This document shows positions 5,341 to 47,691 of a stretch of DNA of 47,874 nucleotides, in pieces (the first letter of the stretch is position 1; each line of letters begins with the position of its first letter). Under the pieces are notes generated by a model. That model was not told where the DNA came from and ran no database searches. It saw only the letters and a list, made by a program, of their open reading frames with translations. A program made the translations under genes and the position numbers. The DNA is from Octopus bimaculoides (taxonomy: Eukaryota): positions 1,521,112 through 1,568,985 of the forward strand of contig NC_069005.1 of assembly GCF_001194135.2 (NCBI RefSeq), in the 5' to 3' direction.

Positions 5341-8300
5341 CTGAAACAGAGAAAAAACAATAAAAAATGGAATTTGGTGAAAAGGTTTCGTGTAATTTGT
5401 AAAAGATGCGAAAAAGTGATAGGAAACACTTCACTCCACAACACTGACTCAAAACCAAACTCTCTCTCTCACTCACTCACTATCTATCTATCCATCTATC
5501 TAGCTAGCTCTCTATCTATCTATCTATCTATCTATCTATCACTCCCTGTCTCTCTCTCTCTCTATTTCTATCTATCTAATTCTCTCTCTCTCTCTTTCTA
5601 TCTATCTAATTCTCTCTCTCTCTCTCTATTTCTATCTATCTAATTCTCTCTCTCCCTCTCTCTATTTCTATCTATCTAATTCTCTCTTTCTCTCTCTAAT
5701 TCTTTCTCCCTCTCTCTTATCTCATCATGTAGCTTCCAATCAAATTCTCTCTCTCACTCTCTCTCTTCCTCTAGCTTTCTATCTAATTCTCTCTCTCACT
5801 CTCTCTCTTTGTCTTGCTCTCTATCTAATCCTCTCTCTCTCCTTTGTTCTCAGTTTAACTGCCTTCCTCTCTCTCTTTCTATTTATCAATCTATATGTCT
5901 ATTCTCTTTTACACACTTTTTCTCTCTCTCTCTCACACACACACACAAGTAATAGCCAGATTACACTCAAATATATGTATATATATGTGTATATATGTAT
6001 ATATATATATATACACACCAGTGACAATAAAGCTAAACCACTTCCAAGATTTAACAAGAGGGGAACAATGCTGAACTTCCCTGCCCGTCCTTGGATTGTG
6101 ATGAGGAACTGGATTCCATAGGCCTTTATCAAAGTCCGCATCGATTGATTCTCATTTTGGAAATATTTTGCAAACCTGGACAAGTAGAACACACAGACAG
6201 GAAATATAGTGTTGTAATCTTTCAATTAGTGAATCTGTTAATCTCTTTTAATCTCTTAATCATTTAATTTTTTAATTGTTGGATATCTTAATTTTTTCAG
6301 TTATTTAGTTTGAAGGGATTTTACTGATGGTAATAATCTAAGTTCATATTTTCATATGGTACAGGATTCATCGATATCAGTTTCTTGGACAACTAAGTCA
6401 TAGAACATATAGCATGTATATGTGTATACATACATATATTTGTGTTGTGTGTGTGTGTGTGTGCACGTATATGTGTGTGTACATAAAAGTGTAGACAGAC
6501 AGACAGATAGGTAGAATACGTCTATACAGAAATATATAAAGGGCAATTAAGGTGAAAACAGGACTTGAAATAGCTGAGAGTGTTGTGTTTTGAGGTTGAC
6601 AAGATTATGGATTCTTACCTGAAATTAAATCCTTCTGATACAACGTTCGACCGATCCAATCGAGTGAACCTATATTCTGGTAAGCATTCGTCGAGAGAAA
6701 AGTCAAGGTTACAGTTCCAAACAATATTCACTTGAATTGAGGCCCCCTGGAAGAGCAAGAATTACAAGAACGGACAATCTAGAAATACAAGTTCAATGAT
6801 GTCACAAAAGAAATGTTCAGAACATAACATTGTAAACATACGTAATCAGAATAACTTATACTATCGTCATCATCATCGTCATCATCATTAAGTATATGTA
6901 TGTATATTGTATATGTGTCTATACATATAACTGACATGTTTGTATCTCTCTCTCTGTGGCCCTGTGTGTATCTATATATATATATATATATATATATATN
7001 NNNNNNNNNNNNNNNNNNNNNNNNNNNNNNNNNNNNNNNNNNNNNNNNNNNNNNNNNNNNNNNNNNNNNNNNNNNNNNNNNNNNNNNNNNNNNNNNNNNN
7101 NNNNNNNNNNNNNNNNNNNNNNNNNNNNNNNNNNNNNNNNNNNNNNNNNNNNNNNNNNNNNNNNNNNNNNNNNNNNNNNNNNNNNNNNNNNNNNNNNNNN
7201 NNNNNNNNNNNNNNNNNNNNNNNNNNNNNNNNNNNNNNNNNNNNNNNNNNNNNNNNNNNNNNNNNNNNNNNNNNNNNNNNNNNNNNNNNNNNNNNNNCGC
7301 CAACGATATCCACGAGGTTACATTGCTGCCTTCCTTAAATAATTGTTTCTAATTTAGGAAATTTTAAGGGTAGGGGGTAGAGAAGTAAGTCGATATTATC
7401 AGATCCCCCCCACCCCACTCCTCGCCCCACCCAGTAATTGATTGGTATTTCTTTTATTAACCTTGGAAAATGAAAGACAAAAGTTGACCCGAAAAAAATA
7501 ACCTCAAAGTTTTTTTCCTATGCTCAAACAATTTTGCCTGTTCATCACCTTCCTAACCTCATAGCTTCTAATTTAGATTCAAAGCCAGCAGTTTTGAGTC
7601 AACTCCAGCATATAGCTGGTACTTTATTTAATTAACTCTAAAAAGATGAAAAGTAAAGTCAATCTGGGCAGGATTTGAACTCAAAACACAAAGAGCTGAA
7701 AGAAATACTGCTAACCATTTTCCCACCAGTCTAACGAATTATCATCAGAAGAAAAATAAAAAGCAAAACGGATCTTGGAGGCAAAGAAAGTCAGAATTTT
7801 GAGTGAATTCCATAAAAAGAATTTGTTCTGTTCTAAGTGACAATACCATCATCGTGTTACATTATATTTTGGAAAAGTTTCACCTGAATCTGTCTTGATT
7901 TGACTTTTGTGAAGACAGAAAAGATATAAAAACAAGGAGAAACATGTCTGACAAGAGGAAGCAGGACTCTAAGAACATTTGTGTAGGAATATGGAAATAT
8001 TTTGGTTACGAGACAGGCTTAGAATTCTCCCTTATGTCTTCCTATGAAATATGATGCTCCAAGATACATCCCTAACAAGGCATTTAACCAAACACCCAGA
8101 AGTAAATGGAAGAAAGAGATTGAGAGAGGCAGGAAAGAGCAGTGAGAGGGGCAAGTTGGAAAATGAAATGTAAAGAAATCTCCTTACCATTTTCAGAATG
8201 CTTTCGGTACTGTCGTCTCCTTTTACTAAGTCTAAAATATCCTGAATTGTAAAGATGGGGCAAAAGCGATTTGTAGCATTTCGGGGATCATACCGGCATT

Positions 8301-10134
8301 TACTCAGCTGACGATTATTTTCAAAACCAATTATGTTACGTCTGAAATTGGATGGAGAGAGAGAGAGGAGGGAAAAAAATCACTAGAATATAACTGAGAT
8401 ATCAGGGAGAAGAAGACTAACAAGTAAGTCATTAATTAATCAGTCATTGGCCAATAAACACATGTGACCATGGAACTGATGGTTGCCACATTACAACATG
8501 TAGCTTTTAGAAGATCTGTATTCCTCAGGTTTGAGTATTGATCTATAATTATAATGAACTGAAACCTTTCTTGGACACTGAATTCTTCAAAGAACATTCA
8601 TATACAGGCTTACAGATGTTACAAGACATATTTTAGAGGACAGAATGGTTTGGTTTGGAGGAAAGGGTTCTGTTCAAAGCCTTCTCAATCCTCCAAGACT
8701 ACCGGTTATCATTCTGGTGCTAACTCTTTACAATGGCATTCAAAACCAAGTGTTGTAACAATATATAGAGACATTGTAGACTGTATCTAAGAATAGGCAA
8801 CTCAACAGATTGGTATGGAATCTCTCGGCAACAAACACCAGATGTGTGATTTCTTACATCTTGCTTTATACAATTTCAACAGCAGCCTCGACCCCTGTGC
8901 CTCCTTAGCCTTTGTGCCTCCTTAGCCTTTGTGCCTCTTTTGCCTTTGTGCCTCTTTTGCCTTTGTGCCTCCTTTGCGTTTGTGCCTGCTCCGCTCAAAG
9001 CTCTACCACATCACTTGTCTCTCTTCCTCTTATCTCTTTATTGTGCTCGCTTCCATGCCCTGCACTAACCATCATTACCCCCACCAGACAACATAACAAG
9101 ATTCTTATGAAAACCATTTTCCAGATCAACAGATGCAAACTAAAAATGTTTGTTCTTAAGTTTGGATGCTGTGAGGAGAGGAATCTGACATTACAAGACC
9201 GGACCTTCATCTGAAGAAAGAGATTTTCCAACCGAGGTGTTTAGACACTACCAAGAATCCTTAAGAACAAAGCGAAAATGAGGAGGGAATGGTAAACATA
9301 TGGACTGGGGCCAAGTAATGAATAAAGAATAAAAAAAAAAGAGGAATTAAAAGAACTCATATTTTATAAGGTTTAATTAGAGGTCAATGAATAAAAGGGA
9401 TGAAGTGGTTGACTGTGTGGGGTGAGTGGGCAGGTTGGGGGAGAGGTGATGGAGGGAAGGGTTTTTTTCGCTAAGAATTTGTTTTGCAGTTGTGTCCCTA
9501 CAGATGCTGTATCTGTCATTCCACATTTTGGGGCAAAAAAGCAACAAAAAAAAAAAAATAATAAAAATCAAAGCTGAAGAATAAGCTTTATGGTTCTTCA
9601 TATTTCAGAAAGGACTCAACTCAGCTGTAAAAGAACTGCAATTATTAAGGGTAGCAGCTGCACTACTACTACTACTACNNNNNNNNNNNNNNNNNNNNNN
9701 NNNNNNNNNNNNNNNNNNNNNNNNNNNNNNNNNNNNNNNNNNNNNNNNNNNNNNNNNNNNNNNNNNNNNNNNNNNNNNNNNNNNNNNNNNNNNNNNNNNN
9801 NNNNNNNNNNNNNNNNNNNNNNNNNNNNNNNNNNNNNNNNNNNNNNNNNNNNNNNNNNNNNNNNNNNNNNNNNNNNNNNNNNNNNNNNNNNNNNNNNNNN
9901 NNNNNNNNNNNNNNNNNNNNNNNNNNNNNNNNNNNNNNNNNNNNNNNNNNNNNNNNNNNNNNNNNNNNNNNNNNNNNNNNNNNNNNNNNNNNNNNNNNNN
10001 NNNNNNNNNNNNNNNNNNNNNNNNNNNNNNNNNNNNNNNNNNNNNNNNNNNNNNNNNNNNNNNNNNNNNNNNNNNNNNNNNNNNNNNNNNNNNNNNNNNN
10101 NNNNNNNNNNNNNNNNNNNNNNNNNNNNNNNNNN

Positions 10135-10196
<62 letters not shown>

Positions 10197-11117
10197 AACA
10201 TATACACATAGTCTCTCTGTCACTCTTACATACATGCACACATAATCTCTCACTTTCTCTCACACATAAGGACACATAATCGATCTCTCTCCATATCTCT
10301 CTCTCTTTCTATTTCCCTCTCTCTTTCCATCTCTCTCCCTTACCACCACCCCTCTCTCTCTCTCTGTTTGTGTGTGAGCATATTTCTCTTTATGTCTCTG
10401 AGGAGAGGGAAAATATCAATGCCAGTCGTGTTTAATAAATCAATCATTTTGTCTCTTTCTCTTTCTATCTGTATGCGCATATTTCTGCATATGCGCATGC
10501 ATTACGTGTGTGTGTTAGTGTGTATGCATGTATGTTTGTGTGCAATAAAACATGCTGAATGTGCAGCGAGCTGTGACAAATCATTTGCATTCAAACAGCT
10601 GCGCCTGAGATCGTATTTTATTCCCGCAACACGGAAGTGTGCTCGAAGTGTGCATTGGTGGGGGAGAAGAATCTTCTGGAAAAACTGTTGAAAACATGAT
10701 GATGATGATAATAATTATTCCAAATTTTGGCTCAAAGCCAGTAATTTTGGGGGCAGAGGATAAGTCAATTACATCGACCCCCAGTACACAACTGGTACTT
10801 ATGTTATCAGCCCCAAAAGAACAAAAGCTAAAGTGGACCTCAGTAGAATTTGAACTCGGAACATATAACACGGATGGAGACGCCACTTAGACACTAGCAA
10901 CCGTGCCAGCTTGTCACCTTTGGCACAGTTTTGGAGGGGAAGGGGACTAGTCGATAACATTGACCCCAGTATTTCACTGGTACTTAATTTATCAACCCCG
11001 AAAGGATGAAAGGCAAAGTGGACCTCAGCAGAATTTGAACTCAGAACATAGCATCAGGTGAAATACCACTAAGCATTTCCCCTGGTGTGCTAATGATTCT
11101 GCCAGCTCACCATCTTC

Positions 11118-11159
<42 letters not shown>

Positions 11160-14100
11160 TTAATGATAATTATTATAATATTATAAATAATAAATGTCCG
11201 GCACGAAGGTGCTATCTACCTGAAGGGCAACTTTTTGAAAAGGTATTCCAATGATGTCTGTGATGGTATTCATGCGAAAAATGGGGCAGGATTTCAAAGT
11301 GTGGGGATCATAGGTACAGTTTTTGGACATATTCGAATCAACATTAACCCTGTATTAATGAACAAAAATACAAATTTCAAAAAAAAAAAAAACAGAGAAA
11401 CAAATATTTTAAAAAATCCAAGAAATAGGAGGTAAAAACAAAATATAAAAAAGAATAAACTGTAAACAAAATTATATAAATTTATTGTTTTTTTTTTTTG
11501 GTTTTACACCTGTGTGTCTCGGTTAATATCAAATATTTAGGAATAATAAGATAAATGCTTTTTTTAAATATTTTGAATGCTTTGTATCCTGTTTTCAGAA
11601 ACTGGTATTTCCAGCTCATTGGGATAATATATCGAATAGAGACCCCAAAGGGCTCCCCATACATGTCCTGTTACTGTTACACTTGGTTCTTGAGCAGGGT
11701 ACTTAACTCTCAGATGGTTTATTTTTCTTTACAGTAAATAGATAACAGTTCTCGAGCCTGTATACACAAATCAGATGATTCAGACCAAAATTGACAGCCA
11801 TAAAAGCTAAGTCACTTTATGTACCAAGACAAATTTGGGGGACCAAAAATTCCATATGGAATGCTGCAGGATTTGAAGAGACAGTGATGATGTTTGAATG
11901 TTTATGCTTTTATTCTATGTCAACTTGTATGCCAGAAAATATGGTAGTTTGCTGGAGTGAGTTCAAATTTAATCACCAATAAAAACGTGTGATTAACTGC
12001 CATCCGAGAGGAGAAAACTAAAGTAACCAACTGCAATCTGTGACATTCTTCCACTGGTAGCCCAAATACTGTATTGATTGTCAATATAGACCAGGGTCTA
12101 ACTGTTATTGATGAAAACATAACTGGCTTCTCTTCATTCAATTAACAATTTATTGATCTGAAAGTTATTTACATCAATTATGAACTAAGAAATCTAAATA
12201 AATATTTCACATTATTCTGCACAAAAGATCTTCTTCAAATGTATTAACCAATGGAATTGATATTGCAAAAATACTCGTGTCCCTTTAGATTTAGATTTTT
12301 CAACTTCATTAACATCAAAATCAAATCAAATGGAAATTGTAGTTGTGACCCCTGTGCCGGTAGCATGTAAAAAAGCACCACCCAAACGTGGCCGATGCCA
12401 GTGCCGCTTTGACTGTGTATACAGGCTCGAGAACTGTTATCTATTTATCGGATTGTAGTTGTGACCCCTGTGCCGGTGGCATGTAAAAAGCACCCTCCGA
12501 TCGTGGTTGATGCCAGCAGCTCTGGCTCCTGTGCCAGTGGCACATGAAAAGCACCCACTACACTCTTGGAGAGGTTGGCATTAGGAAGGGCATTCAGCTG
12601 TAGAAACTGCCAGATCAGATTGGGGCCTGGTGCAAACTTCTGACTTCCCAGACCCCAGTCGAACCGTCCAACCCATGCCAGCATGGAAAATGGACATTAA
12701 ACGATGATGATGATGGAAAACCCTTTTGGACATTTTCTGTTCCAAAAGGTTTTTCCGATCCAATATCCCCATTCTATTCCGGTGCTGAGCTGGCAGAGGC
12801 ATCGGCATTGCTGGGCCAAATGCTAAATGCAATCTCATCTGGTCCCTTACATTCTGAGTTCAAATTCTACCAAGGCTGGCTTTGCCTTTCATTCTTTTGG
12901 TGCCATTCGAATAAGTACTAACTGTGTACTGGGGGCTGATGGATGCAATCAACTCACCCCACCCCTGAAATTGCTGGCCTTGTGCCAAAATTTTAAACTG
13001 ACATTTACTTTTGCTATTATTTATAAATTTACGTGTGTGCTTCAAGATAGTCCAAAAAAGAATTATTTCATTACAGAGATGTACTTGCATAGCAAGTAAC
13101 CTGATCTGAGATTGTGTACTGGAACAAGCACAATTGCAGCGTGGAAGGTGTTTATAAGCCATTTAAAATAACACACAAAAGCCGTTAGATTCACTTCAAC
13201 ATTTAAATTTAATTTACCAAAATATTTTCGGCGCTTTGAGACTGACAAAATCCTGTGCTCCATTATTTCATGTCTTCTTGAAAGTCTCTAAAATCCTTCT
13301 GATATCTTACACAATATTTTATAAAGGAAAAGTATAATTTGAGGGACAGTAGACTGTTATCTCTGGCAGTAGTCACAATCATATAAAGTCTATCTCCTTC
13401 ACTGTCTCCTACATAATGTGTTTGTTCAAACTGTGATGGCTATTTATAACTATGTAGGTTATCTCGTATGAGAGTTAAGTGTCTGGACTCTAATCTCATA
13501 ATAATGGCTAACAGGATAACAACACAACACTCCCTGGTCAAGGGTTCTGAAATAAAATAGGGCAGGAGTTTGAAGCTTATTTGGGACTTGCTGAAATATA
13601 AACTAGATCTTTTACTTGTTTCAGTCGTTGCACTGTGACCATACTGAGGCAACGCCTTGAAGAGTTTTTTTAGTTGAACAAACTAATCCCAGGACTTATT
13701 TTATTAAAACTTGGTACTTATTCCATGAGGTTTGTTTTGAACACTGGTTGTCAAGCAGTGGTGGGGAACAACCCCCCCCACACACTACTGTATGAGGTCA
13801 TAATCAAAAATTATCTGACCTAGATTTTTTTTTTTTTTTTTTTTTTTTTTGCACAAAATAATAATGCATGATCAAAATCTGCAAGGGTATTTAGGTGGCT
13901 GCGTCCTTCCTGAGCACGAACAAAAATTCTTGTGTCTCTAGGTTGCGCCATTCGCCCACAGTGAAGCGTTGAGTACAGACGTTCACTCTTCAGAGTGTGA
14001 TGTGCAATTTCTCTGTTTGAGTCACGATGACTGAGTGTATTGAGCAAAGATGCTGTAACAAATTCTGCTCAAAACTTGGTGGTACTCAAGCCAAGACAAT

Positions 14101-17003
14101 TGAGAAGATTCAGAAGGCCTTTGGAGATGATGCTTTGGGAAAACACAAATAAAGGAGTGGTACAATCGGTTCAAAGACGGCCCCACCTCAGTGGACAGTG
14201 AGCCATAATTATGCACTACAAGGTGAGACAATTAACAAAGAATACCACCTGGGCGTTCTTTGTTGCCTTCTTGAAGCTGTGTGGCAAAAACAACCCGACC
14301 TGTGGGCAGCAAAGAATTGGTAACTCCACCAATCTAATGCTCCTGTTCATTCCACCCACGTCACTCGAGCATTCCTTGTCAAGCAAAACACACCACTCAT
14401 TCGTCAGGCTTCCTACTCGCCAGACTTGGCTCCATGTGACTTTTGGATTTGGGGGGGGGGTTGCACGTGCGTTTACCTGCATATGACAGCAGAGTCTTAG
14501 AAAATAATTTAAAATCTTACCTGGAGACCTTGAATTTAGGGAAATGAACGTTGTTCTTGACGAAGATGGTGAAATTAGCTGCTGATTTCAGTAAGGGCTC
14601 ACTACAAGAGACAGATTATCAAGTTAGTAGTAGTAGTAGTAAGTAGTAGTTGTTGTTGTAGGAGGGAGGAAAGGAGGGGTAATGGTAATTAGTGTGGTCA
14701 GTAGACAGGTAGATATTAAATGTATAACAACATAGTCCTTCAGATTGGTTCAAAGGCCCAGTTGGTACTTTTAACTCTTTTGATACAAACTCTGCCTTCA
14801 GAACTCCTCTGGTTTCATGGCAGAAAAACCTTCATTTTTAAGTGGTCATATCTAAATTAAAACCTTCCATTACAATTTCGTCAATAACTTAAGTACCAGT
14901 TGCATACTGGAGTCAATCTAATCGACTGCCCCCCCCCCACTTCTCCCAAAATTTCGGGCCTTGTGCCTTAGAGCAGAAAAGATTACATAAGGGTAGGTGA
15001 GAATTACTAGAAAGAAGGGGCAATGCTGGTGATGTCAATGGGAAGTGTCTGAGCACACTCTGAAAGTAGAAAAAGGAAGAACACGGATGAAGAATCACTT
15101 CAGAAAAACCAGTAAATGTGTTTCTTATTGGCATAATGACTCTCCTGAAATACAACAAAGTTTTATGAACCCATTAAGTCCCGCAGTCCTATAAATAGGA
15201 CACTAAATGAGAACATTAAATAAGCTATATCACATTGTCTCAGTGTCCTATTTATAGGACACCGAATATTTCTATTTCTACTTGAAGTAAAGGAGTTTTA
15301 ATAATTATTTTTATCATTATAACGTATTTTCAATCATCTGTAAAAATTTAAAAGTAATATTCAGAAATTTGAGAACTCTGGGAGGGTTAATACAATTGCA
15401 GCATGGAAGACATATTGGCCATCCAAAAACACACAAAGATATGATTTCACTCAATTCTTTATTATTTGGTGTCCATATTTTCATTGCACCAACTACGACC
15501 TGGTCACTGGTTTTTGAATGACCAACATGTGTCGTCCACCCTGTAACTGTTCTAGTTTCAACACAGTCTCAGATCAAAACACTTGTCTGGCAAGTACGTC
15601 TCTGAAACTTTTATGAACAATCTCTCCAAAAATTGTTGGGATTTTCATAGTTGCAATGCAAAGCAAGCAATTTCCAGTGGGATCTAGTTTTTGCATGTCA
15701 AGCAGAAGGAACTGTTTTTCTTTTCTTTTTTTTTTTTTTTTTTTTTTTTTTTTGTATTTTTTGTATTATTTGGGTATGAATTTATCTTTACAGTTTTTGT
15801 TAAAATCAGAAAAAAAAAAGTAATTGACCCAACACTTACCCTAAAGTATCATTTTCAAATGGACACCAGGCATAAATCTCACAGACTTTAGTACCATTTT
15901 GGGAAGAATTTACACAGCGACCAGTTCTGAAGCCTGGAAAATAAAAATCACTTCACATAATCTAGAACCTTTTGAATGCATCATCATCACCACCACCACC
16001 ATAGGACGCACCCTAGCCTAGGCCATACTTTTGCACAATAAATTACCAATAAAATAATGTTTTAATTCTTCCACTTAGCTGTATAACTTTGTTATCACCA
16101 GTAATTATAAGCAGTTAATTGCATCCGCATTTGATATAGCCTAGGTTACATTTACATGACCTCTGATGTATAATTTCAGCCAACAGTCACAAGTTTTGAG
16201 CCCTACATTGAGTGCTTGGATGCAGAGGAAATTTTTTAGCCATTTTTGGGTAAAAAAGGTGTGACTTATAGGTGTGTCAAATGCAGTACTTCATTATTTA
16301 GAAAATTTATTCAAGAAAAGGTAAACTATCTTAACAGAAATGTAGTAACAAAAAGCTTAATGCCCCAAATTGTTTTGGCTGTTTATCAACCCGCTTGGAT
16401 ACCCACATAGACCCCAGGGTTCACTTTTGACCACTTGGCCAACCCCTAATCTAAACAAAGATCCGTTTTATCTTAATTCAATGTTTAAGATCTCCTGGAT
16501 CAGGATAATCTTGGACTAAAAGTAAACCCACAAAACTACTTACCATCGCCACTTGGTATCATTGTTTCAGCTGGGCAGTCAGCGTCGGTGGTACAAAAAT
16601 CACCAGAAGCAACATCCTGCAACACACAGACATTGTTATTTAAACAGGGACTCTAAGAATTTGCACAGACTAACTTATATACTTTCAGGATTTACATAAC
16701 TATGACATCATCATCATCATCGTTTAACGTCTGCTTTCCATGCGTTCATGGGTTGGACGATTTGACTGTGGACTGGTGAAACCGGATGGCTACACCAGGC
16801 TCCAATCTGATTTGGCAGAGTTTCTACAGCTGGATGCCCTTCCTAATGCCAACCACTCAGAGAGTGTAGTGGGTGCTTTTACATGTCACCCGCACGAAAA
16901 CGGCCACGCTCGAAATGGTGTCTTATGTGCCACCCACACAAGAGCCAGTCCAGGGGCACTGGCAACGATCTCACTTGGCTTGCCGGGTCTTCTCACGCAC
17001 AGC

Positions 17004-18130: not shown

Positions 18131-21100
18131 CTTGCAAATCTACCCATCTACGATGTAGGCATAAAATGAGGGAGTGAAGGCATAATGGCAGTATGTATTG
18201 AGAAATATGTAAATGGACTTGATAGATTACTGGCTGATGTCTTAGAGAAATCATATTATTTTTGGTGATATAATATTCTATTACAGCTATATGATGTGTT
18301 TGTGACTCTGTGAGGTGATGATGATTCACTCCCAAACTGAAATAGTCTCCCAGCCTCTGTACCATGAATGGTTATGTGGACCACTCCTAAAAAAATCCAG
18401 ACCTTCCTTCAACCATTACATAAAAAGTATTAAGAAAAAATGTTATTTACATATACTTTTATTTTAGTTGTTTGCACTATTTTACACTTGTTTATACTCT
18501 TATACATTCAAAGTTGACAAATTTCCTTATTTAAATTATGAATCATATTCATTTCGATAATATCAATATGATTACAAAACTTCTTTGTAGACAATATTTT
18601 CGGTTTGGTCAACACTAATTTTCAAATTACTGAAGTCCGTTGCTCTACTCATAGTGACGTATAACTGGCCATGTGTAAACATTGGAGTGGGTAAAAATAC
18701 ACCGATACGATCTAAAGTCTGACCTTGTGCCTCGTTTGCTGTGAATGCGCGAACGGAATCTTTAAGAATCCTCCCATCTACGATGGGAAATAAAGGGAGG
18801 AGAGAGAGAGAGAGAGAGGAAGAAGAGAGTATAAAGTTAGTCTTATAGTCTTACATTCCACCAAATCTAGTGCTGACCCATTCTTTGTCTCACTGTTTAC
18901 CAAACATGGTGGTATTCCATTTATAACCACAATGTATACCAGACATAATTATACCACACCCCTCCGTCCACCCAGTTCATAGCATCACAGTATACCACGC
19001 ACAGTTATGAGGTCTCATATTTCCAGTACGCACTAACCATGGTGATATCTCCCTTATTAATCTTTTTGGACCCTAACCATGGTGATATCTCTTTTATAGT
19101 ATCAATGAACATCAGTCACACCTTTATCACCTCACACTTTCACTCTACTCACAGTAATAGCCGTAGCATTGATAACAGTAGCAAGAACAACAATGAAAGC
19201 ATTTCTAGTAGTAGTAGTAGTAGTAGTGGTGGTTTACTTACTTGGGGACACCTTTGAGTCTGGTTGTACGTTATAATAGCATTGGTCATTACAAACACAG
19301 CACCGTTCTCCTGTAAAATATCAAGATATATACAGAGTTCAAATTTACAGGTAACAAAAGAGAAAGGACAGGTGAATGAACAAGAAGCAGGTGTATTCGT
19401 TTGGTGCTTGGGAAGAATGGAGAAGTCTTTGACATTTTTGAACCTGTGTTCTTTGACAGAAGGGATTGAGAGGAAAAAATGGAGAGAGAATGAAAAAATC
19501 AGAGAGAGGAAAAAATGTATAGGGGTCAATGGTTCAACACACATACACACACATATCATCATTATCATCATCATTTAAAGTCCACCTTCCATGCTGGCAT
19601 GGATGGGACGGCTTGACAAGAGCCAGCCAGGCAGAAGCCTGTGCCAGACTTCTGTAACTGTTTTGGTAGGATTTTTAAGGCTGGATGCCCTTCCGAACAC
19701 CAACCACTTTACAGAGTGTCCTGGGTGCTTTAAGTGGCACCTGCACTGACAGGGTCATCAAGTACTTGCAAAACAAAACAAAAAAAAACATTTTTGAGGG
19801 TGGGGGCATTGGAGGAGGTGATCTTGTATCTGGTGATGAAAGGTTATTTTCAGTTTATCTCACCTGAGGTGGAACAACATAGTCTGCCACATCCCAGACT
19901 CCAGGTGTGTCTGACAAAATTGTTCGGTTTGTCAAAGCGATGCCTTTTACTTTCGTGCTGATGGATCCAACTACAAAATCAAATTCTTGGTAACCTTTCT
20001 TGTAGACAATAACATACCTGTCAAAGACAGAAACATATACGATGATGCCATAATTAGTGGAAAAATCTATTATTATATGTACAAAAGACAAAATATTTGT
20101 CTACCCTGCTTTTTGAATAAGATATTTACTTTTGTAAAAACTTCAGGGTATTTCAGAAGCTGGGTAGCACATTTTTTTTCAATACAAAGGAATTATATCG
20201 GCCAAACTTAATACCTGTCACATATTTATATATATAATTCCACTTGGACGTTATGTTATATATAAAGAAGGGCCATTATGCAAATGAAAAAAACACAAAC
20301 CTGAAGCAGACTTGGATATATTATTGAAGATGTTGTGAATGATGACGAATTAATTTGACAAACCTAGCTCACTGATTGATTGACTGACCAATTAATCAAA
20401 TAATTAATTAGTTACTTGGTCAAATTGTTAGCTAATTGCCAAATGCCATATTTCCCAGCATATAATTCAAATTTTCAGCCCCAGGTGTACAACCAATTAA
20501 GGTAGGCTGACTTATACACAAAGAAAACTGTCATTTAGGTGCAACACCAACAATTTTTTGAAGGAAAGGATTTGATGATACTATTGACCCCAGTACTTTG
20601 TCAGTACTTTATTTTATTGACCCCAGATGGACGAGAGGCAAAATTAACCTCAGCTGGATTTGAACTCACAACGTAAAGAACTGGAACAAATTCTGCAAAA
20701 CATTTTTTTCTCACATTCTAACAATTCTTGCCACCTTATGTTCTTTTATTCTTTTACTTCTTTCAGTCATTTGATTGTGGCCATGCTAGAGCACAACCTG
20801 TCTGCAAAATTATATTTTTCTAAACAAACTTCATTTTATATGTTGTTTAAATTATTTTTCATAAAAATCTCAACATTATACTCTATGGTGCCTTTGATGT
20901 TTGCATTTAATTATTATAATTGTGTAACTAATTAATGTATTATAACACTTTAATTAATGTTGCCCGAGTTATTTTATGTCTATTTATGAAATTCTAAAAT
21001 TAAAAATTTCTTATTTCTTTCAACACAGAAACATTCTACAGAATTTTAGGATATTTTCCATGTCACATACCAGATCCAATTTTTTTCTAGAAATTTCCAA

Positions 21101-24100
21101 ATAATTTCAATATTTAAAGATTCATAACTTCTTTGCTTTTAATATCTCAAAAAATGGTTATGATTTTCATAATTGGTGTGAAAAACTACATCTGTGCTGA
21201 AATTCTTTTAAATATTTATTGTAGAGCAGGAAACTAAAAAGACCTGTTTTTTATGCCATTCCAGTTTCCACCCGGAACAGAAAAGGTTCCACACTTTTGT
21301 TTTAACGTATATGCTTTGGATGGGAATGGATTAAGAAACAAACTATTTAGAGGGAACCTCTGACAGAGTAGGGAACCTCTGTCAGGGTAGGGAACCTCTG
21401 TCAGGGTAGGGAACCACTATCAGGGTAGGGAATCTCTGTCAGGGTAGGGAATCTCTATCAGGGTAGGGAATCTCTATCAGGATAAGGAGCCTCTATCAGG
21501 GTAGTGAAGCTTTTTTTCTGTTTTTTAATGTGGACTGGGTGAAGACAAATTGCAAATCCATAAGAATTTCTGAAGACTTGTCGATTTTGAGAAAACTAAT
21601 GACTATTTATTGTTAATCTAGGGCTTACAACATAAATTAACATGAAATTTTGATGGAAGGTTTTGATTCAGATCACTTAAAAAACATGAAACTTGTGTTA
21701 GAGAACCAAGGCAGTCTTGAAAGCAGACTGGCATCGAAACGGTTCACTTGTTTCTGACCAACCTATGGTATGAATTTTTTGTTTTAAACCGGTATAAATC
21801 AAAACTTCCCATTAAAATTCCCATCTAATTCATGTTCTAAACACCAGCTTAATAATGACAAAGTTATTTTACAAAATTCAAGGAAACAAAGTCAGTCCTG
21901 ATACAATCTCCTTTCTCTCCAGGTATCACAGCATCAAGAAGGATGTCTATGTCGGCTCGTGAACTTTTAGATGTCCATGAGGTACCAAAAAACCATTAAC
22001 TGATGCATGTTACACACTAACACAAGCCATACTGATTGTGATGGCCACGTTGTATTGCAGCATTCAAATATTTAAAGAACTTGATAATGGAAAAACCGGT
22101 TTCCCTCTAACTTGCATCTAATTCAACCTAAGTTATCATTTTCCCAACAAATTATGGCTGACAGCTATAAATAAAATGGTTCTTGACATACATTTTAGAC
22201 ATGTTCAACAACATTTTTGTAAAACCAAAGTGATATGAAAACAAAATTGATTAAGTGCATTACAATTATTTTGCTAGCAAATAAACCATTTAAACAAGCC
22301 ATTTATGCAATCTTTTTAGTTGTAATGCACATTATTACTCTACAAATTAAATATTTTATTTTAGTCATAAGAGATTCAGACATTCACTGTTATTTCATAA
22401 TCAGTTATCATTCAAGAATAGTCACTTGAACTTTTCAAAATGAATCCATCCATCCAACCATTTTCTCAGTCATCTATCCCTGGGAGGGTCATGGCCGGAA
22501 GAGTCCTCAGATACCTTCTCTATTGGGTCCTAACAGAAGCAACTGTTGTTAGACATTCCGGTTGTATTCCTAAACGTAACCAACTGAGGTCATGGATATT
22601 ATCCGACCATTTTGTTCTTGGTCTGTCCCTAGGGCTCCTGCCAATTTGGCTCACTTTGAAGAATCCATCTTGCAATTCTTTCCTGCGACATTCTAATCTC
22701 ATGTCTGTAAGACCTTGCAGCACTCGGTAGTAAATAACCATTTAGGGTATGCTAGAGATCAGGCAAATAGATCAGGTAATATTCATTTCATTGACGATTT
22801 TGTTTTTCACTTTCACTACGTGATCTTAAACCGAAAGATTCCAAGTTTAGCATAAGTGAACTAGCTATGTTTAAAACGTATCTATTGAGAACCTTCTCAG
22901 TTTATTATTACAAATTGAAAGCCGAAAATTATTGTAAGCAATGGGTATAGGAATTTCAGAAAAAAATATTTTGAAATTAAAAAAAAAATTAATTTTAAAA
23001 AACAAATGTTTTGCAGAATTGTAATAATTTTATTTTAAAAAGTTAAATAAATAATAAAAAATCTAAGTTAAGAAGAAAAAAACTGGAGAAAAAGGGGGAA
23101 TAAGAAAAATGTGAAAAGCTGTTGTTTTTTTTCCTTTATGTGAAGTCGTAATCTCCGTTGAAGAAAACTTCAGAATTAGCAGAAACTTTTGAAAAAAGAA
23201 ACGAGAGAAAAAGAAATATTAGAAAGGAAAAACAAAAATGGGCGAGGCATCTATTCGACCCAGTCAACGGGATATTGACGCTATGTCAATATTTTCACTT
23301 TCGTTATTACAACTTGAAGGAATGTCTGTCTCGCAAAGATATCCTGTTGCGGCTATTGTGACAACATGTGTGAAATATTGACGAAAACATATTATGTGAG
23401 TAGAATGCTTTCGATTTATCGTTTCTTCAACAACTGCAAATGTTGTCAACTCAACATATATTTATGGATGTAATATTTGGATATGTCGTCAGTGCCGTGT
23501 ATAGCCGAGGTGTTTTTCGGGCCTTAAAACCCTCATCCAAGCAACTCGACCTAAATTAAGCAAGTCTGGGCCTGTATCCAAACGGCATTCAACTGATCTC
23601 CACTAATCGTCCTCTTTTCAGCCAGAACCATCTAGATCTAGAATATTTTCTTTCACCAGCCTCTCTGTTGCCGTTGGTGGCTCCTCTGTTCTTTCTGTAA
23701 CCCGACAAGGTTTTATAATCCTTACTCAGGCTGCAACCAGCAAACTTTCATCAATCTCCTCTCGTAAAAAACCTCCATCCTCCCAGTTATATATACCTTA
23801 TATATACCAGTTATATATACCTTATATATATGAAAACTCACATCTTTAATCAAATTGGGGGAGTACAAAGTCTGTTCCTTGTTTTCTTTAGATTTTTTCT
23901 TCTCTTGTTTTAATAACCATCAGCTATTTCATATAAATAAAAGGAAAAAAACCCAAAGTAAAACGAGATGAGGAGAAGAAAATACAACGACTTACCCAAC
24001 AATATATCCAATTATAATCAGTTGTAATAAACGATTGATAATACCGACTTTCTTACTGTGAATGTGGACGATTTTCGGAGTATCATACTCGAAAATTAAA

Positions 24101-24126
24101 CTCAAAATAAAATCGCAATAAGCCAT
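5242..24126 (-). CDS. P2RX: P2X purinoceptor (ATP-gated cation channel), spliced gene model: join(24126-23996, 20017-19864, 19310-19242, 16616-16544, 15933-15840, 14601-14521, [11349-11220 OR 8341-8188], 6746-6619, 6175-6019, 5340-5242); last exon unresolved
   Basis: Hand-translated exons join in frame through GT-AG introns and give family hallmarks: N-terminal YDTPK, TM1, TKVKG lysine pair, NFT, 10 ectodomain Cys, FNFR, RTLIKAYG, TM2 (GSGLALLSL/ASVVADIIMLY), C-terminal YxxxK (YREKK). No vertebrate subtype can be assigned from sequence alone. Confidence 0.96.
5460..5950. repeat. (TCTA)n/(TC)n low-complexity tract
   Basis: Seen directly; includes repeated tctctctctctatttctatctatctaat units. 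Confidence 0.9.
6019..6175 (-). CDS. P2RX: P2X exon 9: FAKYFQNENQSMRTLIKAYGIQFLITIQGRAGKFSIVPLLLNLGSGLALLSL
   Basis: Acceptor ttgtccag|G, donor CTG|gtgtat (weak); RTLIKAYG, AGKF and first half of TM2; inside track ORF 5899-6225. Confidence 0.95.
6619..6746 (-). CDS. P2RX: P2X exon 8: GASIQVNIVWNCNLDFSLDECLPEYRFTRLDRSNVVSEGFNF(R)
   Basis: Acceptor ctcttccag|, donor AG|gtaaga; WNCNLD, CLPxY, RLD and GFNFR motifs; phase 0/2. Confidence 0.96.
8188..8341 (-). CDS. P2RX: P2X alternative exon 7A: (R)RNIIGFENNRQLSKCRYDPRNATNRFCPIFTIQDILDLVKGDDSTESILKM
   Basis: Acceptor catccaatttcag|A, donor ATG|gtaagg; RNI, CxYDP..CPIF; 154 nt, phase 2/0. Confidence 0.9.
8891..8992. repeat. 17-bp minisatellite, about 6 copies (GCCTTTGTGCCTCYTTW)
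   Basis: Units start at 8891, 8908, 8925, 8942, 8959, 8976. Confidence 0.9.
10945..11111 (-). mobile_element. tRNA-derived SINE copy between P2X exons 7B and 7A
   Basis: Clear similarity to 24790-24968. Confidence 0.78.
11220..11349 (-). CDS. P2RX: P2X alternative exon 7B: (R)VNVDSNMSKNCTYDPHTLKSCPIFRMNTITDIIGIPFQKVALQ
   Basis: Acceptor ttttgttcattaatacag|G, donor CAG|gtagat; open frame with CxYDP..CPIF; 130 nt, phase 2/0. Expression is not shown by sequence. Confidence 0.8.
12345..12715 (+). mobile_element. (GAT)n-tailed SINE or RTE 3'-end repeat with internal tandem duplication
   Basis: attgtagttgtgacccctgtgccggt occurs twice (about 12336 and 12451) before the conserved 3' end and gatgatgatg tail. 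Confidence 0.75.
12783..12960 (+). mobile_element. tRNA-derived SINE copy, inverted relative to 10945-11111
   Basis: gagctggcagag...tctgagttcaaattc...tttgcctttcattc...aagtact...actggggg. Confidence 0.72.
14027..14450 (+). mobile_element. Internally deleted, decayed mariner (Tc1/mariner) transposase fragment
   Basis: Translates to MTECIEQRCCNKFCSKLG...IQKAFGDDALGKTQIKEWYNRFKDGPTSVDSEP (N-terminal HTH region), then jumps to W*LHQSNAPVH...SYSPDLAPCDFW (C-terminal mariner motifs) with a stop codon. Confidence 0.88.
14521..14601 (-). CDS. P2RX: P2X exon 6: EPLLKSAANFTIFVKNNVHFPKFKVS(R)
   Basis: Acceptor cttgtag|, donor AG|gtaaga; NFT and KNNxxFPKF motifs; phase 2/2. Confidence 0.95.
15840..15933 (-). 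CDS. P2RX: P2X exon 5: FRTGRCVNSSQNGTKVCEIYAWCPFENDTL(G)
   Basis: Acceptor ttttccag|, donor GG|gtaagt; TGRCV and CEIxAWCP motifs; phase 1/2. Confidence 0.95.
16544..16616 (-). CDS. P2RX: P2X exon 4: DVASGDFCTTDADCPAETMIPSGD(G)
   Basis: Acceptor ttgcag|, donor G|gtaagt; head-domain C..D.DC pattern; phase 0/1. Confidence 0.92.
16706..17003 (-). mobile_element. (GAT)n-tailed SINE or RTE 3'-end repeat
   Basis: Contains ggttggcattaggaagggcatccagctgtagaaac and a (GAT)n tail in element sense. Copies: about 4865-4995, 17070-17332, 17718-18035, 19556-19770, 47692-47874 (minus) and 12345-12715, 30075-30245, 41797-41985 (plus). Confidence 0.8.
19242..19310 (-). CDS. P2RX: P2X exon 3: ENGAVFVMTNAIITYNQTQRCPQ
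   Basis: Acceptor ttttacag|, donor CAA|gtaagt; FVMTN and QTQ..CP motifs; phase 0/0. Confidence 0.93.
19864..20017 (-). CDS. P2RX: P2X exon 2: YVIVYKKGYQEFDFVVGSISTKVKGIALTNRTILSDTPGVWDVADYVVPPQ
   Basis: Acceptor gacag|G, donor CAG|gtgaga; KGYQ, TKVKG and WDVADY motifs; inside track ORF 19855-20091. Confidence 0.96.
21352..21503. repeat. 19-bp minisatellite, about 8 copies (GGGAACCTCTGTCAGGGTA)
   Basis: Head-to-tail units with point variants and no spacers. Confidence 0.9.
22440..22730 (-). mobile_element. RTE-type LINE 3' fragment
   Basis: ORF 22520-22741 gives GRSPRDRPRTKWSDNIHDLSWLRLGI, resembling the G.R.RGRP..RW C-terminus of RTE-clade ORFs. Confidence 0.65.
23996..24126 (-). CDS. P2RX: P2X exon 1: MAYCDFILSLIFEYDTPKIVHIHSKKVGIINRLLQLIIIGYIV(G)
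   Basis: ATG at 24126; YDTPK motif and TM1; donor GG|gtaagt, phase 2. Confidence 0.93.
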
Positions 24127-24789
24127 TACTAAATCTTGTTGTGTTACTCCTGTTTCAACTGCAGCACTTAGTTTCTGTTTTAATGTTTTCCTTTTCCTTT
24201 TTTTTTTTACGGAAATTGGTTCACAGTTATGGGATGGCGTGTACCACAGTTAAAAGAAAATCTGGTCTTAATCCCAGTGGGTTGCTTATTATGATGCGAT
24301 TTGGTCACATGAGATAATTATTATTATAGGACAAAAAAAAAAAAAAGAAAAAAAGACCGATGGCCTTTCATATCTCTTTATTCTCTCTTCTTCTCTTTCA
24401 CTTATCAGGTGTGTTATTAAACAAAAGCAAACAAGAAAGAAAAAAACCGTGGGCGATTAGTTTAGTTCATCTCTCACACTAACCACAATAGAAACATACA
24501 ACTGTTACAGGACAAAAAAAAATCGTTGTTTTTTATTTTATTTTATCTAATTTCATTTTATTTTATTCAATTTGATATTTGCCCCGGGTTTAACATTACA
24601 ATCGAATGGCAACAGCATGGCAATAAATAGCAAAACATATTTCACTTATAAACATTCAATATATCACCAAATAAAACCACTTTTAACACGATTGTATGAA
24701 ATACGCATTACACACATATATACATAAGCACACACACATACGCACGCACACATTTCTATATTGCCCACAAGAGGGCTAGACATAGAGGG

Positions 24790-24968
24790 GGACAAACAAG
24801 GGATTAAGTTGATTACATCGACCCAGTGCGTAACTGGTACTTATTTAATCGACCCCGAAAGGATGAAAGGCAAAGTCGACCTCGGCGGAATTTGAGCTCA
24901 GAACGTAACGGCAAACGAAATACCGCTAAGCATTTCGCTCGGCGCGCTAACGATTCTGCCGGCTCGCC
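24790..24968 (-). mobile_element. Well-preserved tRNA-derived SINE (family with GCCTTTCATCCTTTCGGGGTCGAT central block)
   Basis: Element sense reads ggcgagccggcagaatcgttagc...ctgagctcaaattcc (A/B-box-like), then the conserved central block. Other copies: about 5020-5170, 7590-7740, 10740-10920, 10945-11111, 20570-20700 (all minus) and 12783-12960, 41068-41280 (plus). Confidence 0.8.
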
Positions 24969-26011
24969 CCCCCCCNNNNNNNNNNNNNNNNNNNNNNNNN
25001 NNNNNNNNNNNNNNNNNNNNNNNNNNNNNNNNNNNNNNNNNNNNNNNNNNNNNNNNNNNNNNNNNNNNNNNNNNNNNNNNNNNNNNNNNNNNNNNNNNNN
25101 NNNNNNNNNNNNNNNNNNNNNNNNNNNNNNNNNNNNNNNNNNNNNNNNNNNNNNNNNNNNNNNNNNNNNNNNNNNNNNNNNNNNNNNNNNNNNNNNNNNN
25201 NNNNNNNNNNNNNNNNNNNNNNNNNNNNNNNNNNNNNNNNNNNNNNNNNNNNNNNNNNNNNNNNNNNNNNNNNNNNNNNNNNNNNNNNNNNNNNNNNNNN
25301 CTCTATTGCCGAACCGCTAAGTTACAGGGACGTAAACACATCAACATCGGTTGTCAAGCAATGGTGGGGGAGAACAAATACAGACATAAAGACACACCCA
25401 CATTATTACAGGGATTGGACAAAATAATGGAAACACCTAGCATCACAGCATCATAATTTTGAAATATCTATAAAACCGTCAAAAGCTTGTTTATTTTTAT
25501 GCTTTTTGATTTATTTTTAGTGTTGCTTAATGTTTTGCTAAAATTGCTGTTTCTTTTCATATATCATCAGAAAAAGGTAATTAAAATTCTTTAAAATGAC
25601 AGATTTATTGAACTTTCAAAGAGGTCGAACTGTTGGTGCTCGTATGGCAGGTGCTAGCGTAACAAAAATAGCCGAAATGGACAAGCTTTATACTGTACTC
25701 TAATACGTTCTTAACAGAATATACCTTAGCTATATATATATATATATATATAATATATTACGGGCTTCTTTCAGTTTTCGTCTACCAAATCCACTTACAG
25801 AGCTTTGGTCAGCTTGAGATACTTGTCCAAGGTTCCATGCAGTGGGACTGAACCTGGAACCATGAGTTTCGGAAGCAAGCTTCTTACCACACACCCACAC
25901 CTGTGCCTAAGATCACAGCCACGCCTGCACCTATGATCATAGCCACACCTGTACCTCAATAGATAAATAGATAGATGTAGATATAGGTACAGATATAAAA
26001 TATAGATTAGT

Positions 26012-47364: not shown

Positions 47365-47691
47365 GTAAGTATCTGGCTTTCACGTCGCAACTGTTTTCAA
47401 CTGTTTAGCATTCAGATTACTTCTGTCAGATGTGGTGGCTTCTTGATTCATAGTTTTGAATCAATCGAGCATTGTCTTGTAGCTTTGAGACTTCAATGAT
47501 ATGATTGTTTATTTTTAGAATGACGCTGAAGAATGATAGGTGTCAGAGGCCAGACCTTGCCTACTTTAACATAAAACAGAATATTGGGGCCAGATATGGC
47601 CACTTTAAATGCTAAAGGGTTAACAATTAATCTGTGTTTGCTTTAATAATTCTCTGTAATTAGGTCTGTCTCTCTCTTTCATATATATGTA

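What the first reader, a model, noticed from the sequence alone, without database searches (positions are those of the whole stretch)
8188..11349. Tandem duplicated, frame-locked mutually exclusive exons in a P2X receptor gene
Seen: two homologous exons sit between exon 6 (ends AG|gt, phase 2) and exon 8 (starts phase 0). 7B (11220-11349, 130 nt) and 7A (8188-8341, 154 nt) each have a plausible acceptor and donor, no stop, and CxYDP...CPIF. Each alone restores the frame. Both together (phase 0 into phase 2) or neither causes a frameshift. No other P2X exon was found duplicated, so this is not a second gene. The two peptides differ strongly outside Cys/YDP/CPIF, suggesting an old duplication with 7B kept open by selection. 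Established: this exon encodes the dorsal fin and its disulfide, which borders the intersubunit ATP pocket, and P2X channels are trimers. Inference: one gene could make two receptor chemistries plus mixed trimers through a cassette switch. I am not aware of such a switch in P2X genes but cannot search the literature here.
Basis: partly seen in the sequence, partly recalled or inferred. Interest (0 to 1): 0.88.

Follow-up and report, generated by a model that had tools for sequence, protein, structure and literature searches.

The report
Octopus ATP-receptor gene's alternative exon pair
The octopus P2X ATP-receptor gene really does have two interchangeable copies of exon 7, but both isoforms are already in RefSeq and the same swap was cloned in the sea slug Aplysia; the new point here is that the pair occurs in every mollusc class examined.

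Summary
The window is the Octopus bimaculoides P2X4-like gene, on the minus strand. Exon 7B (11349-11220, 130 nt) and exon 7A (8341-8188, 154 nt) both have AG/GT sites and are 1 mod 3. Each alone gives an open frame. Both together, or neither, gives stop codons.

Splicing the window either way reproduces RefSeq isoform X1 (7A, XP_014779935.1) and X2 (7B, XP_014779936.1) exactly. The assembly gap lies inside the 7B-7A intron. The gap-free O. vulgaris chromosome shows the same order: exon 6, 7B, 7A, exon 8.

The switch is not new. Aplysia AcP2X and AcP2Xb differ only in exon 7 (Sci Rep 2021), and a Lymnaea paper suspected an alternative exon in 2012.

I found no published account of the pair's breadth. 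An upstream B-type and a downstream A-type exon, in the same phase, sit in all seven mollusc genomic loci inspected. Same-gene isoform pairs also occur in abalone, periwinkle, mussel, scallop, clam and a chiton. One brachiopod and two nemertean genes have a single exon 7.

The exon encodes the dorsal-fin wall of the ATP pocket, so two receptor flavours are likely. Functional difference is inferred, not shown.

The parts
11220..11349 (-). Exon 7B (B-type, resembling vertebrate and outgroup exon 7; 130 nt; encodes VNVDSNMSKNCTYDPHTLKSCPIFRMNTITDIIGIPFQKVALQ after a split Arg codon)
   Evidence: AG/GT sites, 1 mod 3, open frame. Used in RefSeq isoform X2, XP_014779936.1. Orthologues in O. vulgaris, Argonauta and Sepia. 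dN/dS 0.47 against Argonauta.
8188..8341 (-). Exon 7A (A-type, mollusc-specific; 154 nt; encodes RNIIGFENNRQLSKCRYDPRNATNRFCPIFTIQDILDLVKGDDSTESILKM after a split Arg codon)
   Evidence: AG/GT sites, 1 mod 3, open frame. Used in RefSeq isoform X1, XP_014779935.1.
14521..14601 (-). Exon 6, the constitutive upstream partner; ends AG|gtaaga in phase 2
6619..6746 (-). Exon 8, the constitutive downstream partner; starts in phase 0 (GGG GCC..)
8342..11219 (-). Intron between 7B and 7A (2878 nt as assembled), containing the assembly gap at 9679-10134
   Evidence: the gap is intronic, and the order is confirmed by collinearity with the gap-free O. vulgaris locus L002
4271..24126 (-). Whole P2X4-like coding region: e1 24126-23996, e2 20017-19864, e3 19310-19242, e4 16616-16544, e5 15933-15840, e6, 7B/7A, e8, e9 6175-6019, e10 5340-5242, e11 4342-4271 (including the stop)
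   Evidence: spliced translations equal P0002 and P0121 exactly. PF00864. Human P2X4 structure 9bqh, E = 1.7e-112.
11118..11159 (-). (CAU)n tract in the RNA, starting about 60 nt downstream of the 7B donor; speculative pairing partner of the tract at 6843-6898
   Evidence: Present at the same place in O. vulgaris, absent in Argonauta and Sepia.
6843..6898 (-). (AUG/ACG)n tract in the RNA, about 100-150 nt upstream of the exon 8 acceptor and complementary to the (CAU)n tract; pairing would loop out 7A
   Evidence: Conserved only within the genus Octopus, so speculative.

Best explanation
This is the Octopus bimaculoides orthologue of an ancient pair of mutually exclusive exons in the P2X receptor gene, found across molluscs.

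A tandem duplication of exon 7 occurred before the living mollusc classes diverged. It produced an upstream B-type copy that resembles the exon 7 of other animals, and a downstream A-type copy specific to molluscs.

The spliceosome joins exon 6 to one of the two copies and that copy to exon 8. Both copies are 1 mod 3, sitting between a phase-2 donor and a phase-0 acceptor. Transcripts with both copies or with neither are therefore frameshifted and hit early stop codons. Nonsense-mediated decay presumably removes them, so only one-copy mRNAs make protein.

The two products, 403 and 395 aa, are identical except for 51 or 43 residues. Those residues form the dorsal fin, its Cys-Cys loop and the following helices, which wall the ATP pocket between subunits.

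The likely result is two subunit flavours from one gene, differing in agonist potency, agonist profile or gating, and able in principle to mix in trimers.

Shown: the anatomy, the frame lock, the existence of both annotated isoforms, the conservation and the purifying selection. Inferred: nonsense-mediated decay as the enforcing step, regulated exon choice, functional difference and heterotrimers.
For: - Exact anatomy and frame lock.
- Both isoforms are in public records. O. bimaculoides has XP_014779935.1 and XP_014779936.1. O. vulgaris has QHX41545.1 and QHX41546.1. O. sinensis has X1 and X2.
- The order e6, B, A, e8 with AG/GT sites and length 1 mod 3 holds in O. vulgaris, Argonauta, Sepia, Patella, Ostrea and Solemya.
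- Same-gene isoform pairs that differ in exon 7 between an A-type and a B-type form exist in three Haliotis species, Gigantopelta, Babylonia, Littorina, Ruditapes, Mytilus, Mizuhopecten, Elysia and the chiton Liolophura. For Mytilus, Mizuhopecten and Elysia the rest of the protein was also checked and is 98-100% identical.
- A-types group across classes, and B-types group with vertebrate P2X4. Type-specific residue signatures are conserved.
- Lingula, Lineus and Tubulanus genes have one exon 7.
- 7B is under purifying selection: omega 0.47, p = 0.03, with dN equal to that of 7A.
- The Aplysia cDNAs differ only at residues 215-264. AcP2X is B-type and AcP2Xb is A-type. Both gave ATP currents, the A-type form smaller and unstable.
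- The exon maps to human P2X4 residues 203-249, a region where alanine mutants change potency and agonist profile.
- Both isoform models are confident across exon 7. They differ in the short helix before the first Cys.
Against: - No RNA reads could be examined here. Use of 7B in O. bimaculoides rests on database isoform models and on O. vulgaris GenBank entries whose experimental basis I could not verify.
- Tissue or stage regulation is unknown.
- Selection on 7B is only modestly significant. Over the short O. bimaculoides-O. vulgaris distance omega was 0.65, from 7 substitutions.
- No conserved intronic regulator was found.
- The only functional comparison of the two types, in Aplysia, is 'data not shown' and reports similar currents.
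- Orthology of the B-types rests on short, divergent peptides plus their position.
Confidence: 0.85

Rival explanations
1. 7B is a decaying duplicate (a pseudo-exon) that gene predictors splice in by homology. It is not used in vivo, and only 7A is functional.
For: 7B has the weaker intronic donor (gtagat). Omega was 0.65 over the short O. bimaculoides-O. vulgaris distance. The retrieved Argonauta, Sepia and Solemya protein models lack the B exon.
Against: The open frame, both splice sites, the Cys pair and the 1-mod-3 length are kept in all seven mollusc genomic loci examined. dN equals that of 7A, and omega is 0.47 against Argonauta. B-type forms are the cloned, best-expressing receptor in Aplysia. 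In many molluscs the B-type form is among the annotated isoforms.
Confidence: 0.04
2. Assembly artefact: the 7B region belongs to a collapsed paralogue or was misjoined across the gap at 9679-10134.
For: A gap lies between the two exons, and the newer O. bimaculoides assembly did not close it.
Against: The gap-free O. vulgaris chromosome has the same order with collinear introns on both sides of the gap position. Five further mollusc loci without assembly gaps show the same order. No other P2X exon is duplicated.
Confidence: 0.01
3. The pair is real and both exons are used, but the two isoforms are functionally equivalent. The duplication persists through neutral or splicing-level constraints rather than because it gives two receptor chemistries.
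For: Aplysia AcP2Xb gave 'currents very similar' to AcP2X. Core residues (N204, the Cys pair, CPIF) are shared by both types.
Against: Two distinct residue signatures have been maintained across all the mollusc classes sampled. This is hard to explain without different functions. The differing positions lie in the segment where single alanine changes alter potency and agonist profile. Land snails keep one gene of each type.
Confidence: 0.12

Closest known systems
Aplysia californica AcP2X / AcP2Xb (NP_001191558.1 / NP_001191559.1; Gyori, Kohn, Romanova and Moroz, Sci Rep 2021, PMC7943599)
   Same: One P2X gene with two cDNAs that differ only in exon 7 (residues 215-264). One is B-type and the other A-type, by the same signatures as octopus 7B and 7A. 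Both were expressed in oocytes.
   Different: The paper calls them splice forms with a '147 base deletion/insertion'. It does not call them mutually exclusive tandem exons or a conserved pair. The Aplysia genome was too fragmented to show the exon order. The octopus B-type is 4-8 residues shorter and lacks the Leu three residues before the first Cys.
Lymnaea stagnalis LymP2X versus transcriptome contig FX193730 (Bavan et al., PLoS One 2012, PMC3510196)
   Same: A segment of 150 nt and 50 aa differs between two transcripts of one gene, and the authors suggested an alternative exon. LymP2X carries an A-type exon 7.
   Different: It was only suspected, and it was placed in the head domain. There was no genomic evidence.
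Tandem-duplicated mutually exclusive exons in other ligand-gated channels, from my own knowledge: AMPA-receptor flip/flop exons, and insect RDL exon 3 and exon 6 variants
   Same: A homologous exon pair in the extracellular or ligand-binding part. One gene yields subunits with different agonist sensitivity or desensitisation that can co-assemble.
   Different: These are unrelated protein families. For P2X the functional difference between the variants has not been measured.
Vertebrate P2X splice variants (for example the P2X7 isoforms reviewed in PMC9329894)
   Same: Alternative splicing diversifies P2X subunits.
   Different: These involve exon skipping, intron retention, and alternative first or last exons. 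That review mentions mutually exclusive exons only as a generic category. Vertebrates diversify mainly through seven paralogous genes.

Membership tests
P2X receptor family (PF00864) | Sequence match to the P2X family profile and to solved P2X structures | tested here: met
   PF00864 is recorded for P0002 and P0001. Human P2X4 structure 9bqh matches at E = 1.7e-112 over residues 4-377.
P2X receptor family (PF00864) | Ten conserved ectodomain cysteines, the NFR motif and two transmembrane helices | tested here: met
   Invariant C116, C126, C132, C149, C160, C166, C216, C228, C264 and C273, and N293-F294-R295, in alignments A1 and A3. Terminal long helices at 25-49 and 331-371 in the model.
Tandem-duplicated mutually exclusive exon pair | Two adjacent homologous exons with the same splice phase and similar length | tested here: met
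   130 and 154 nt, both 1 mod 3, both AG/GT, homologous peptides sharing the C..C-P-I-F core.
Tandem-duplicated mutually exclusive exon pair | Either exon alone keeps the frame; both or neither breaks it | tested here: met
   Translations.
Tandem-duplicated mutually exclusive exon pair | Mature transcripts contain exactly one of the two | tested here: inconclusive
   Annotated isoforms X1 and X2, and the O. vulgaris GenBank pair, each hold one copy. No reads could be mapped here, so double-inclusion or skipped transcripts cannot be counted.
Mollusc P2X exon-7 A/B pair (as in Aplysia AcP2X/AcP2Xb) | Isoforms differ only in exon 7 | tested here: met
   P0002 and P0121 are identical outside exon 7.
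Mollusc P2X exon-7 A/B pair (as in Aplysia AcP2X/AcP2Xb) | One A-type exon (RNI-x-G-F..L..CR..CPIF[V/I]) and one B-type exon, with B upstream of A | tested here: met
   7A fits the A signature. 7B groups with the B-types, although its N-terminal part is shortened in cephalopods. The order B then A holds in seven mollusc genomic loci.
Mutual exclusion by competing RNA pairing (docking site and selector type, as in Dscam) | Conserved intronic sequences complementary to each other next to the alternative exons | tested here: inconclusive
   The only candidate is a (CAU)n/(AUG)n microsatellite pair shared by the two Octopus species and absent in Argonauta and Sepia. Flank conservation is not elevated.
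Mutual exclusion by steric hindrance or by U2/U12 spliceosome incompatibility | An intron between the two exons too short to splice, or one U12-type and one U2-type intron | tested here: not met
   The intervening intron is 744 nt to 22 kb long. All sites are GT-AG with U2-type donors.

The most novel reading that the evidence does not exclude
The exon-7 A/B switch arose in the mollusc stem lineage and has been maintained in all the classes sampled here. Those are cephalopods, gastropods, bivalves and a chiton. It acts as the molluscs' substitute for the vertebrate P2X gene family. One gene yields two pharmacologically distinct dorsal-fin variants, plus heterotrimers, under regulated splicing. 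In stylommatophoran land snails a gene duplication has left one paralogue annotated with each type. I found no paper stating this conservation in the library searched.
Probability: 0.45. Interest if true: 0.55.

Novelty: already known. Interest (0 to 1): 0.35.

Why it matters
Molluscs generally have a single P2X gene, whereas vertebrates have seven. An exon pair that swaps the dorsal-fin wall of the ATP pocket, and that has been kept across all the mollusc classes sampled, is a natural experiment. It shows how ATP-receptor diversity can arise without gene duplication, and which dorsal-fin residues tune agonist recognition.

For this particular finding the practical value is modest. The octopus isoforms are already annotated, and the swap has been cloned in Aplysia. 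What this analysis adds is the evolutionary frame: one ancient duplication, a fixed B-then-A order, conserved type signatures, and absence in the brachiopod and nemertean outgroups. It also locates open B-type exons in the Argonauta, Sepia and Solemya genomes that the retrieved protein models of those species do not use.

Tried and rejected
- **Newer O. bimaculoides assembly (L001).** I hoped it would close the gap. It is the same sequence with the same gaps.
- **dN/dS between O. bimaculoides and O. vulgaris, exon by exon.** There were too few substitutions to decide. I replaced it with the Argonauta comparison.
- **Profile search with exon 6 + A-type + exon 8 segments.** It returned mostly short fragments and told me little about taxonomic breadth.
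- **Flanking-intron conservation as a mark of regulated exons.** It was not elevated relative to constitutive exons.
- **Search for docking and selector RNA pairings.** Hits were microsatellites, poly-A/T runs, dispersed repeat copies specific to O. bimaculoides, and a 34-nt perfect inverted repeat not found in O. vulgaris. None is conserved beyond the genus.
- **My first impression that B donors are simply weaker than A donors.** The U1-match count did not bear this out (means about 6 of 9 for both). Only a class difference at position +4 holds.
- **Cys-Cys spacing (11 versus 9 residues) as a type marker.** Rejected, because heterobranch and several other B-types also have 11.
- **Look-ups of the shorter isoforms in the gene index.** These failed because only the longest product per gene is indexed.
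Full report
**What is there.** The window is a stretch of the Octopus bimaculoides genome. It matches assembly GCA_001194135.2, record CM046625.1, base for base, gaps included. It carries a P2X4-like ATP-gated channel gene on the minus strand.

A rough tblastn probe, followed by the real protein, placed eleven coding exons per transcript between 24126 and 4271. Exon 7 is present twice.
- 7B lies at 11349-11220. It is 130 nt, with acceptor tacag| and donor |gtagat.
- 7A lies at 8341-8188. It is 154 nt, with acceptor tttcag| and donor |gtaagg.

Exon 6 ends AG|gt in phase 2, and exon 8 begins in phase 0. Both exon 7 copies are 1 mod 3. Each alone keeps the frame, while inclusion of both or of neither runs straight into stop codons.

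Splicing the window through 7A gives a 403-aa protein identical to P0002. Splicing it through 7B gives a 395-aa protein identical to P0121.

**The assembly gap.** The N run at 9679-10134 lies inside the intron between 7B and 7A and touches neither exon. The newer O. bimaculoides assembly is the same sequence re-scaffolded, so it cannot close the gap.

The gap-free O. vulgaris chromosome (L002) supplies the independent test. It has exon 6 at 14756-14839, 7B at 20227-20358, 7A at 23964-24119 and exon 8 at 27094-27234. Collinear intron blocks reach the low-coordinate edge of the gap position (window 9678) and come within about 800 bases of the other edge (window 10936). A misjoin or a collapsed paralogue is effectively excluded.

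**It is already annotated and already published in relatives.** The 7B isoform I built from the window is exactly XP_014779936.1, 'P2X purinoceptor 4 isoform X2 [Octopus bimaculoides]'. The 7A isoform is XP_014779935.1 (X1).

O. vulgaris has both forms as GenBank entries, QHX41545.1 (7A) and QHX41546.1 (7B). O. sinensis has X1 and X2.

[quoted passage not shown] I retrieved both proteins. They differ only at residues 215-264.

I found no paper on the octopus isoforms. I also found none that calls the pair mutually exclusive or shows it to be conserved. A review of P2X7 splicing uses 'mutually exclusive' only as a generic category.

**How old and how widespread.** The isoform pairs of the limpet Patella vulgata and the oyster Ostrea edulis differ only in this segment. 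In the genomes, two tandem exon 7 copies lie between exons 6 and 8 in Patella, Ostrea, Argonauta, Sepia and Solemya. In every case a B-type copy lies upstream of an A-type copy. Each copy has AG/GT sites and a length of 1 mod 3.

The B copies of Argonauta (L005 15917-16046), Sepia (L006 33771-33894) and Solemya (L007 13765-13906) are open, but the retrieved protein models of those species do not use them.

A wider protein survey found same-gene isoform pairs with one A-type and one B-type exon 7. They occur in three Haliotis species, Gigantopelta, Babylonia, Littorina, Ruditapes, Mytilus, Mizuhopecten and Elysia crispata, and in the chiton Liolophura. For Mytilus, Mizuhopecten and Elysia the rest of the protein was also checked and is 98-100% identical. 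The chiton places the pair on both sides of the deepest mollusc split.

Two bivalve gene models, Saccostrea cucullata and Tegillarca, wrongly read through both copies, B then A. This again gives the genomic order.

In a score matrix and neighbour-joining tree, A-types from cephalopods, a gastropod and bivalves group together. B-types group with each other and with vertebrate P2X4. The peptides are short and the B-types divergent, so this is supportive rather than conclusive. The fixed genomic order is the stronger argument for a single duplication.

Each mollusc locus has exactly two copies. The genes of the brachiopod Lingula and the nemerteans Lineus and Tubulanus have a single exon 7, flanked by introns of a few hundred bases at most, with no second copy. 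On this sampling the duplication dates to the mollusc stem. Annelids could not be checked.

**Selection.** Over the short O. bimaculoides-O. vulgaris distance the per-exon estimates are noise: omega is 0.65 for 7B, from 2 synonymous and 5 non-synonymous changes.

Against Argonauta, 7B has omega 0.47 (one-sided p = 0.03). Its dN of 0.32 is about equal to 7A's 0.29. 7A and exon 6 are clearly constrained.

7B also has unusually low synonymous divergence (pS 0.45, against 0.81 for 7A). That pattern is often seen when an alternative exon carries splicing signals, but here it is only suggestive.

The strongest evidence for selection is retention. The frame, both splice sites, the Cys pair and the phase are kept in every mollusc examined.

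**What the exon encodes.** Octopus residues 202-252 align to human P2X4 residues about 203-249 in the solved structure 9bqh. This segment contains the dorsal-fin loop, the Cys217-Cys227 disulfide and the CPIF strand.

In rat P2X4, alanine scanning of R203-L214 showed several effects. R203A and N204A are nearly dead. I205A, T210A and L214A change ATP potency and agonist responsiveness. L214 contacts the ATP ribose (PMC4232510).

Across 24 A-type and 27 B-type mollusc exons, the types carry distinct conserved signatures at exactly these positions:

| P2X4 position | A-type | B-type |
|---|---|---|
| 206-208 | (L/I)-G-(F/Y) | P-(D/E)-N |
| 213 | acidic or polar | aromatic |
| 218 | Arg in 96% | variable |
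| 231 | hydrophobic | polar |
| 234 | acidic | Thr/Ser |

Cephalopod B-types are further shortened and lack the Leu three residues before the first Cys.

AlphaFold models of both octopus isoforms are confident through exon 7, with block pLDDT of 72-89 for X1 and 66-85 for X2. Both keep the strand and the two helices after the second Cys. Only the 7A model has the short helix before the first Cys. These are monomer models from shallow alignments and count only as weak evidence.

**Mechanism.** The frame lock is shown. The following steps are inferred.
- Double-inclusion and skipped transcripts are cleared by nonsense-mediated decay.
- Exon choice is regulated.

Steric hindrance and U2/U12 incompatibility are excluded. 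The intervening intron is 744 nt to 22 kb long, and all sites are U2-type GT-AG.

Both alternative exons have weaker donors (5-7 of 9 U1 matches) than exons 6 and 8 (7-8 of 9). There is also a consistent class difference in all seven species. B donors read AG|gt followed by g, c or t. A donors read G|gtaa.

I found no conserved docking or selector pairing. One candidate is specific to the genus Octopus. A (CAU)n tract starts about 60 nt after the 7B donor. It is complementary to an (AUG/ACG)n tract about 100-150 nt before exon 8, and pairing would loop out 7A. Both tracts are present in O. vulgaris and absent in Argonauta and Sepia. This could easily be chance.

**Function.** In Aplysia the B-type form (AcP2X) gave robust ATP currents. 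The A-type form (AcP2Xb) gave similar but much smaller and unstable currents, reported as data not shown. The functionally characterised Lymnaea receptor is A-type. Both types can therefore form ATP-gated channels. Whether they differ in pharmacology or co-assemble is untested.

**Verdict.** However, the octopus isoforms are already annotated, and the swap is already cloned in a gastropod.

The conservation of an ordered B/A pair across molluscs, its absence in three lophotrochozoan outgroups, and its possible resolution into two genes in land snails are modest additions that I could not find in the literature.

Noticed in passing
L005 15917-16046 (Argonauta hians); L006 33771-33894 (Sepia/Acanthosepion pharaonis); L007 13765-13906 (Solemya velum): These are open B-type exon 7 copies with AG/GT sites and a length of 1 mod 3. 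The protein models retrieved for these species use only the A-type exon, so a second isoform is probably missing from each annotation.
   Followed up: yes
proteins P0173/P0183 (Bradybaena similaris) and P0175/P0065 (Candidula unifasciata): In these land snails the B-type and A-type exon 7 occur in two different genes on different contigs. The proteins are only 60-67% identical outside exon 7. This fits a gene duplication in which each paralogue is annotated with one type. The B-type copies carry a 10-residue insertion (PGSIQLPENV).
   Followed up: partly
proteins P0195 (Saccostrea cucullata) and P0239 (Tegillarca granosa): These public gene models read through both exon 7 copies in tandem, B then A. 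That is a prediction error, since the real junction would shift the frame.
   Followed up: partly
window 24752-24924, next to the gap at 24976-25300; L002 872-2270: O. vulgaris has 7.7 tandem copies of a 183-bp unit about 730-2130 bp upstream of the P2X start codon. O. bimaculoides shows one copy abutting an assembly gap, so the gap probably hides a collapsed array. Related copies sit in the introns around 7B (10761-11067, 7599-7687, and inverted at 12852-12941).
   Followed up: partly
window 11735-11768 and 12414-12447: A perfect 34-nt inverted repeat (TAAATAGATAACAGTTCTCGAGCCTGTATACACA), with 645 nt between the arms, lies in intron 6. It looks like the ends of a small DNA transposon. The arms were not found in O. 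vulgaris or Argonauta with up to 8 mismatches.
   Followed up: partly
window 44380-44733 and 47119-47499, + strand: Open frames here match DUF5601 (E = 2.7e-13) and the VPS9 domain (E = 3.3e-27). They are exons of a neighbouring gene resembling a Rab5 exchange factor, on the opposite strand to the P2X gene and upstream of it.
   Followed up: no
window 11220-11349 compared with L005 15917-16046: Synonymous divergence in 7B (pS 0.45) is much lower than in 7A (0.81) or exon 6 (0.65) over the same species pair. This hints at constraint on the RNA itself, such as splicing enhancers or silencers, inside 7B.
   Followed up: no
protein P0272 (Aplysia NP_001191558.1), residues about 215-228: The start of the Aplysia B-type exon reads RQTKPSKQRKRHV, where all other molluscs have RRNLP..D.YL. 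This looks like a local frame error in the deposited cDNA, or an Aplysia-specific change. It lies in the functionally sensitive R203-L214 equivalent.
   Followed up: no
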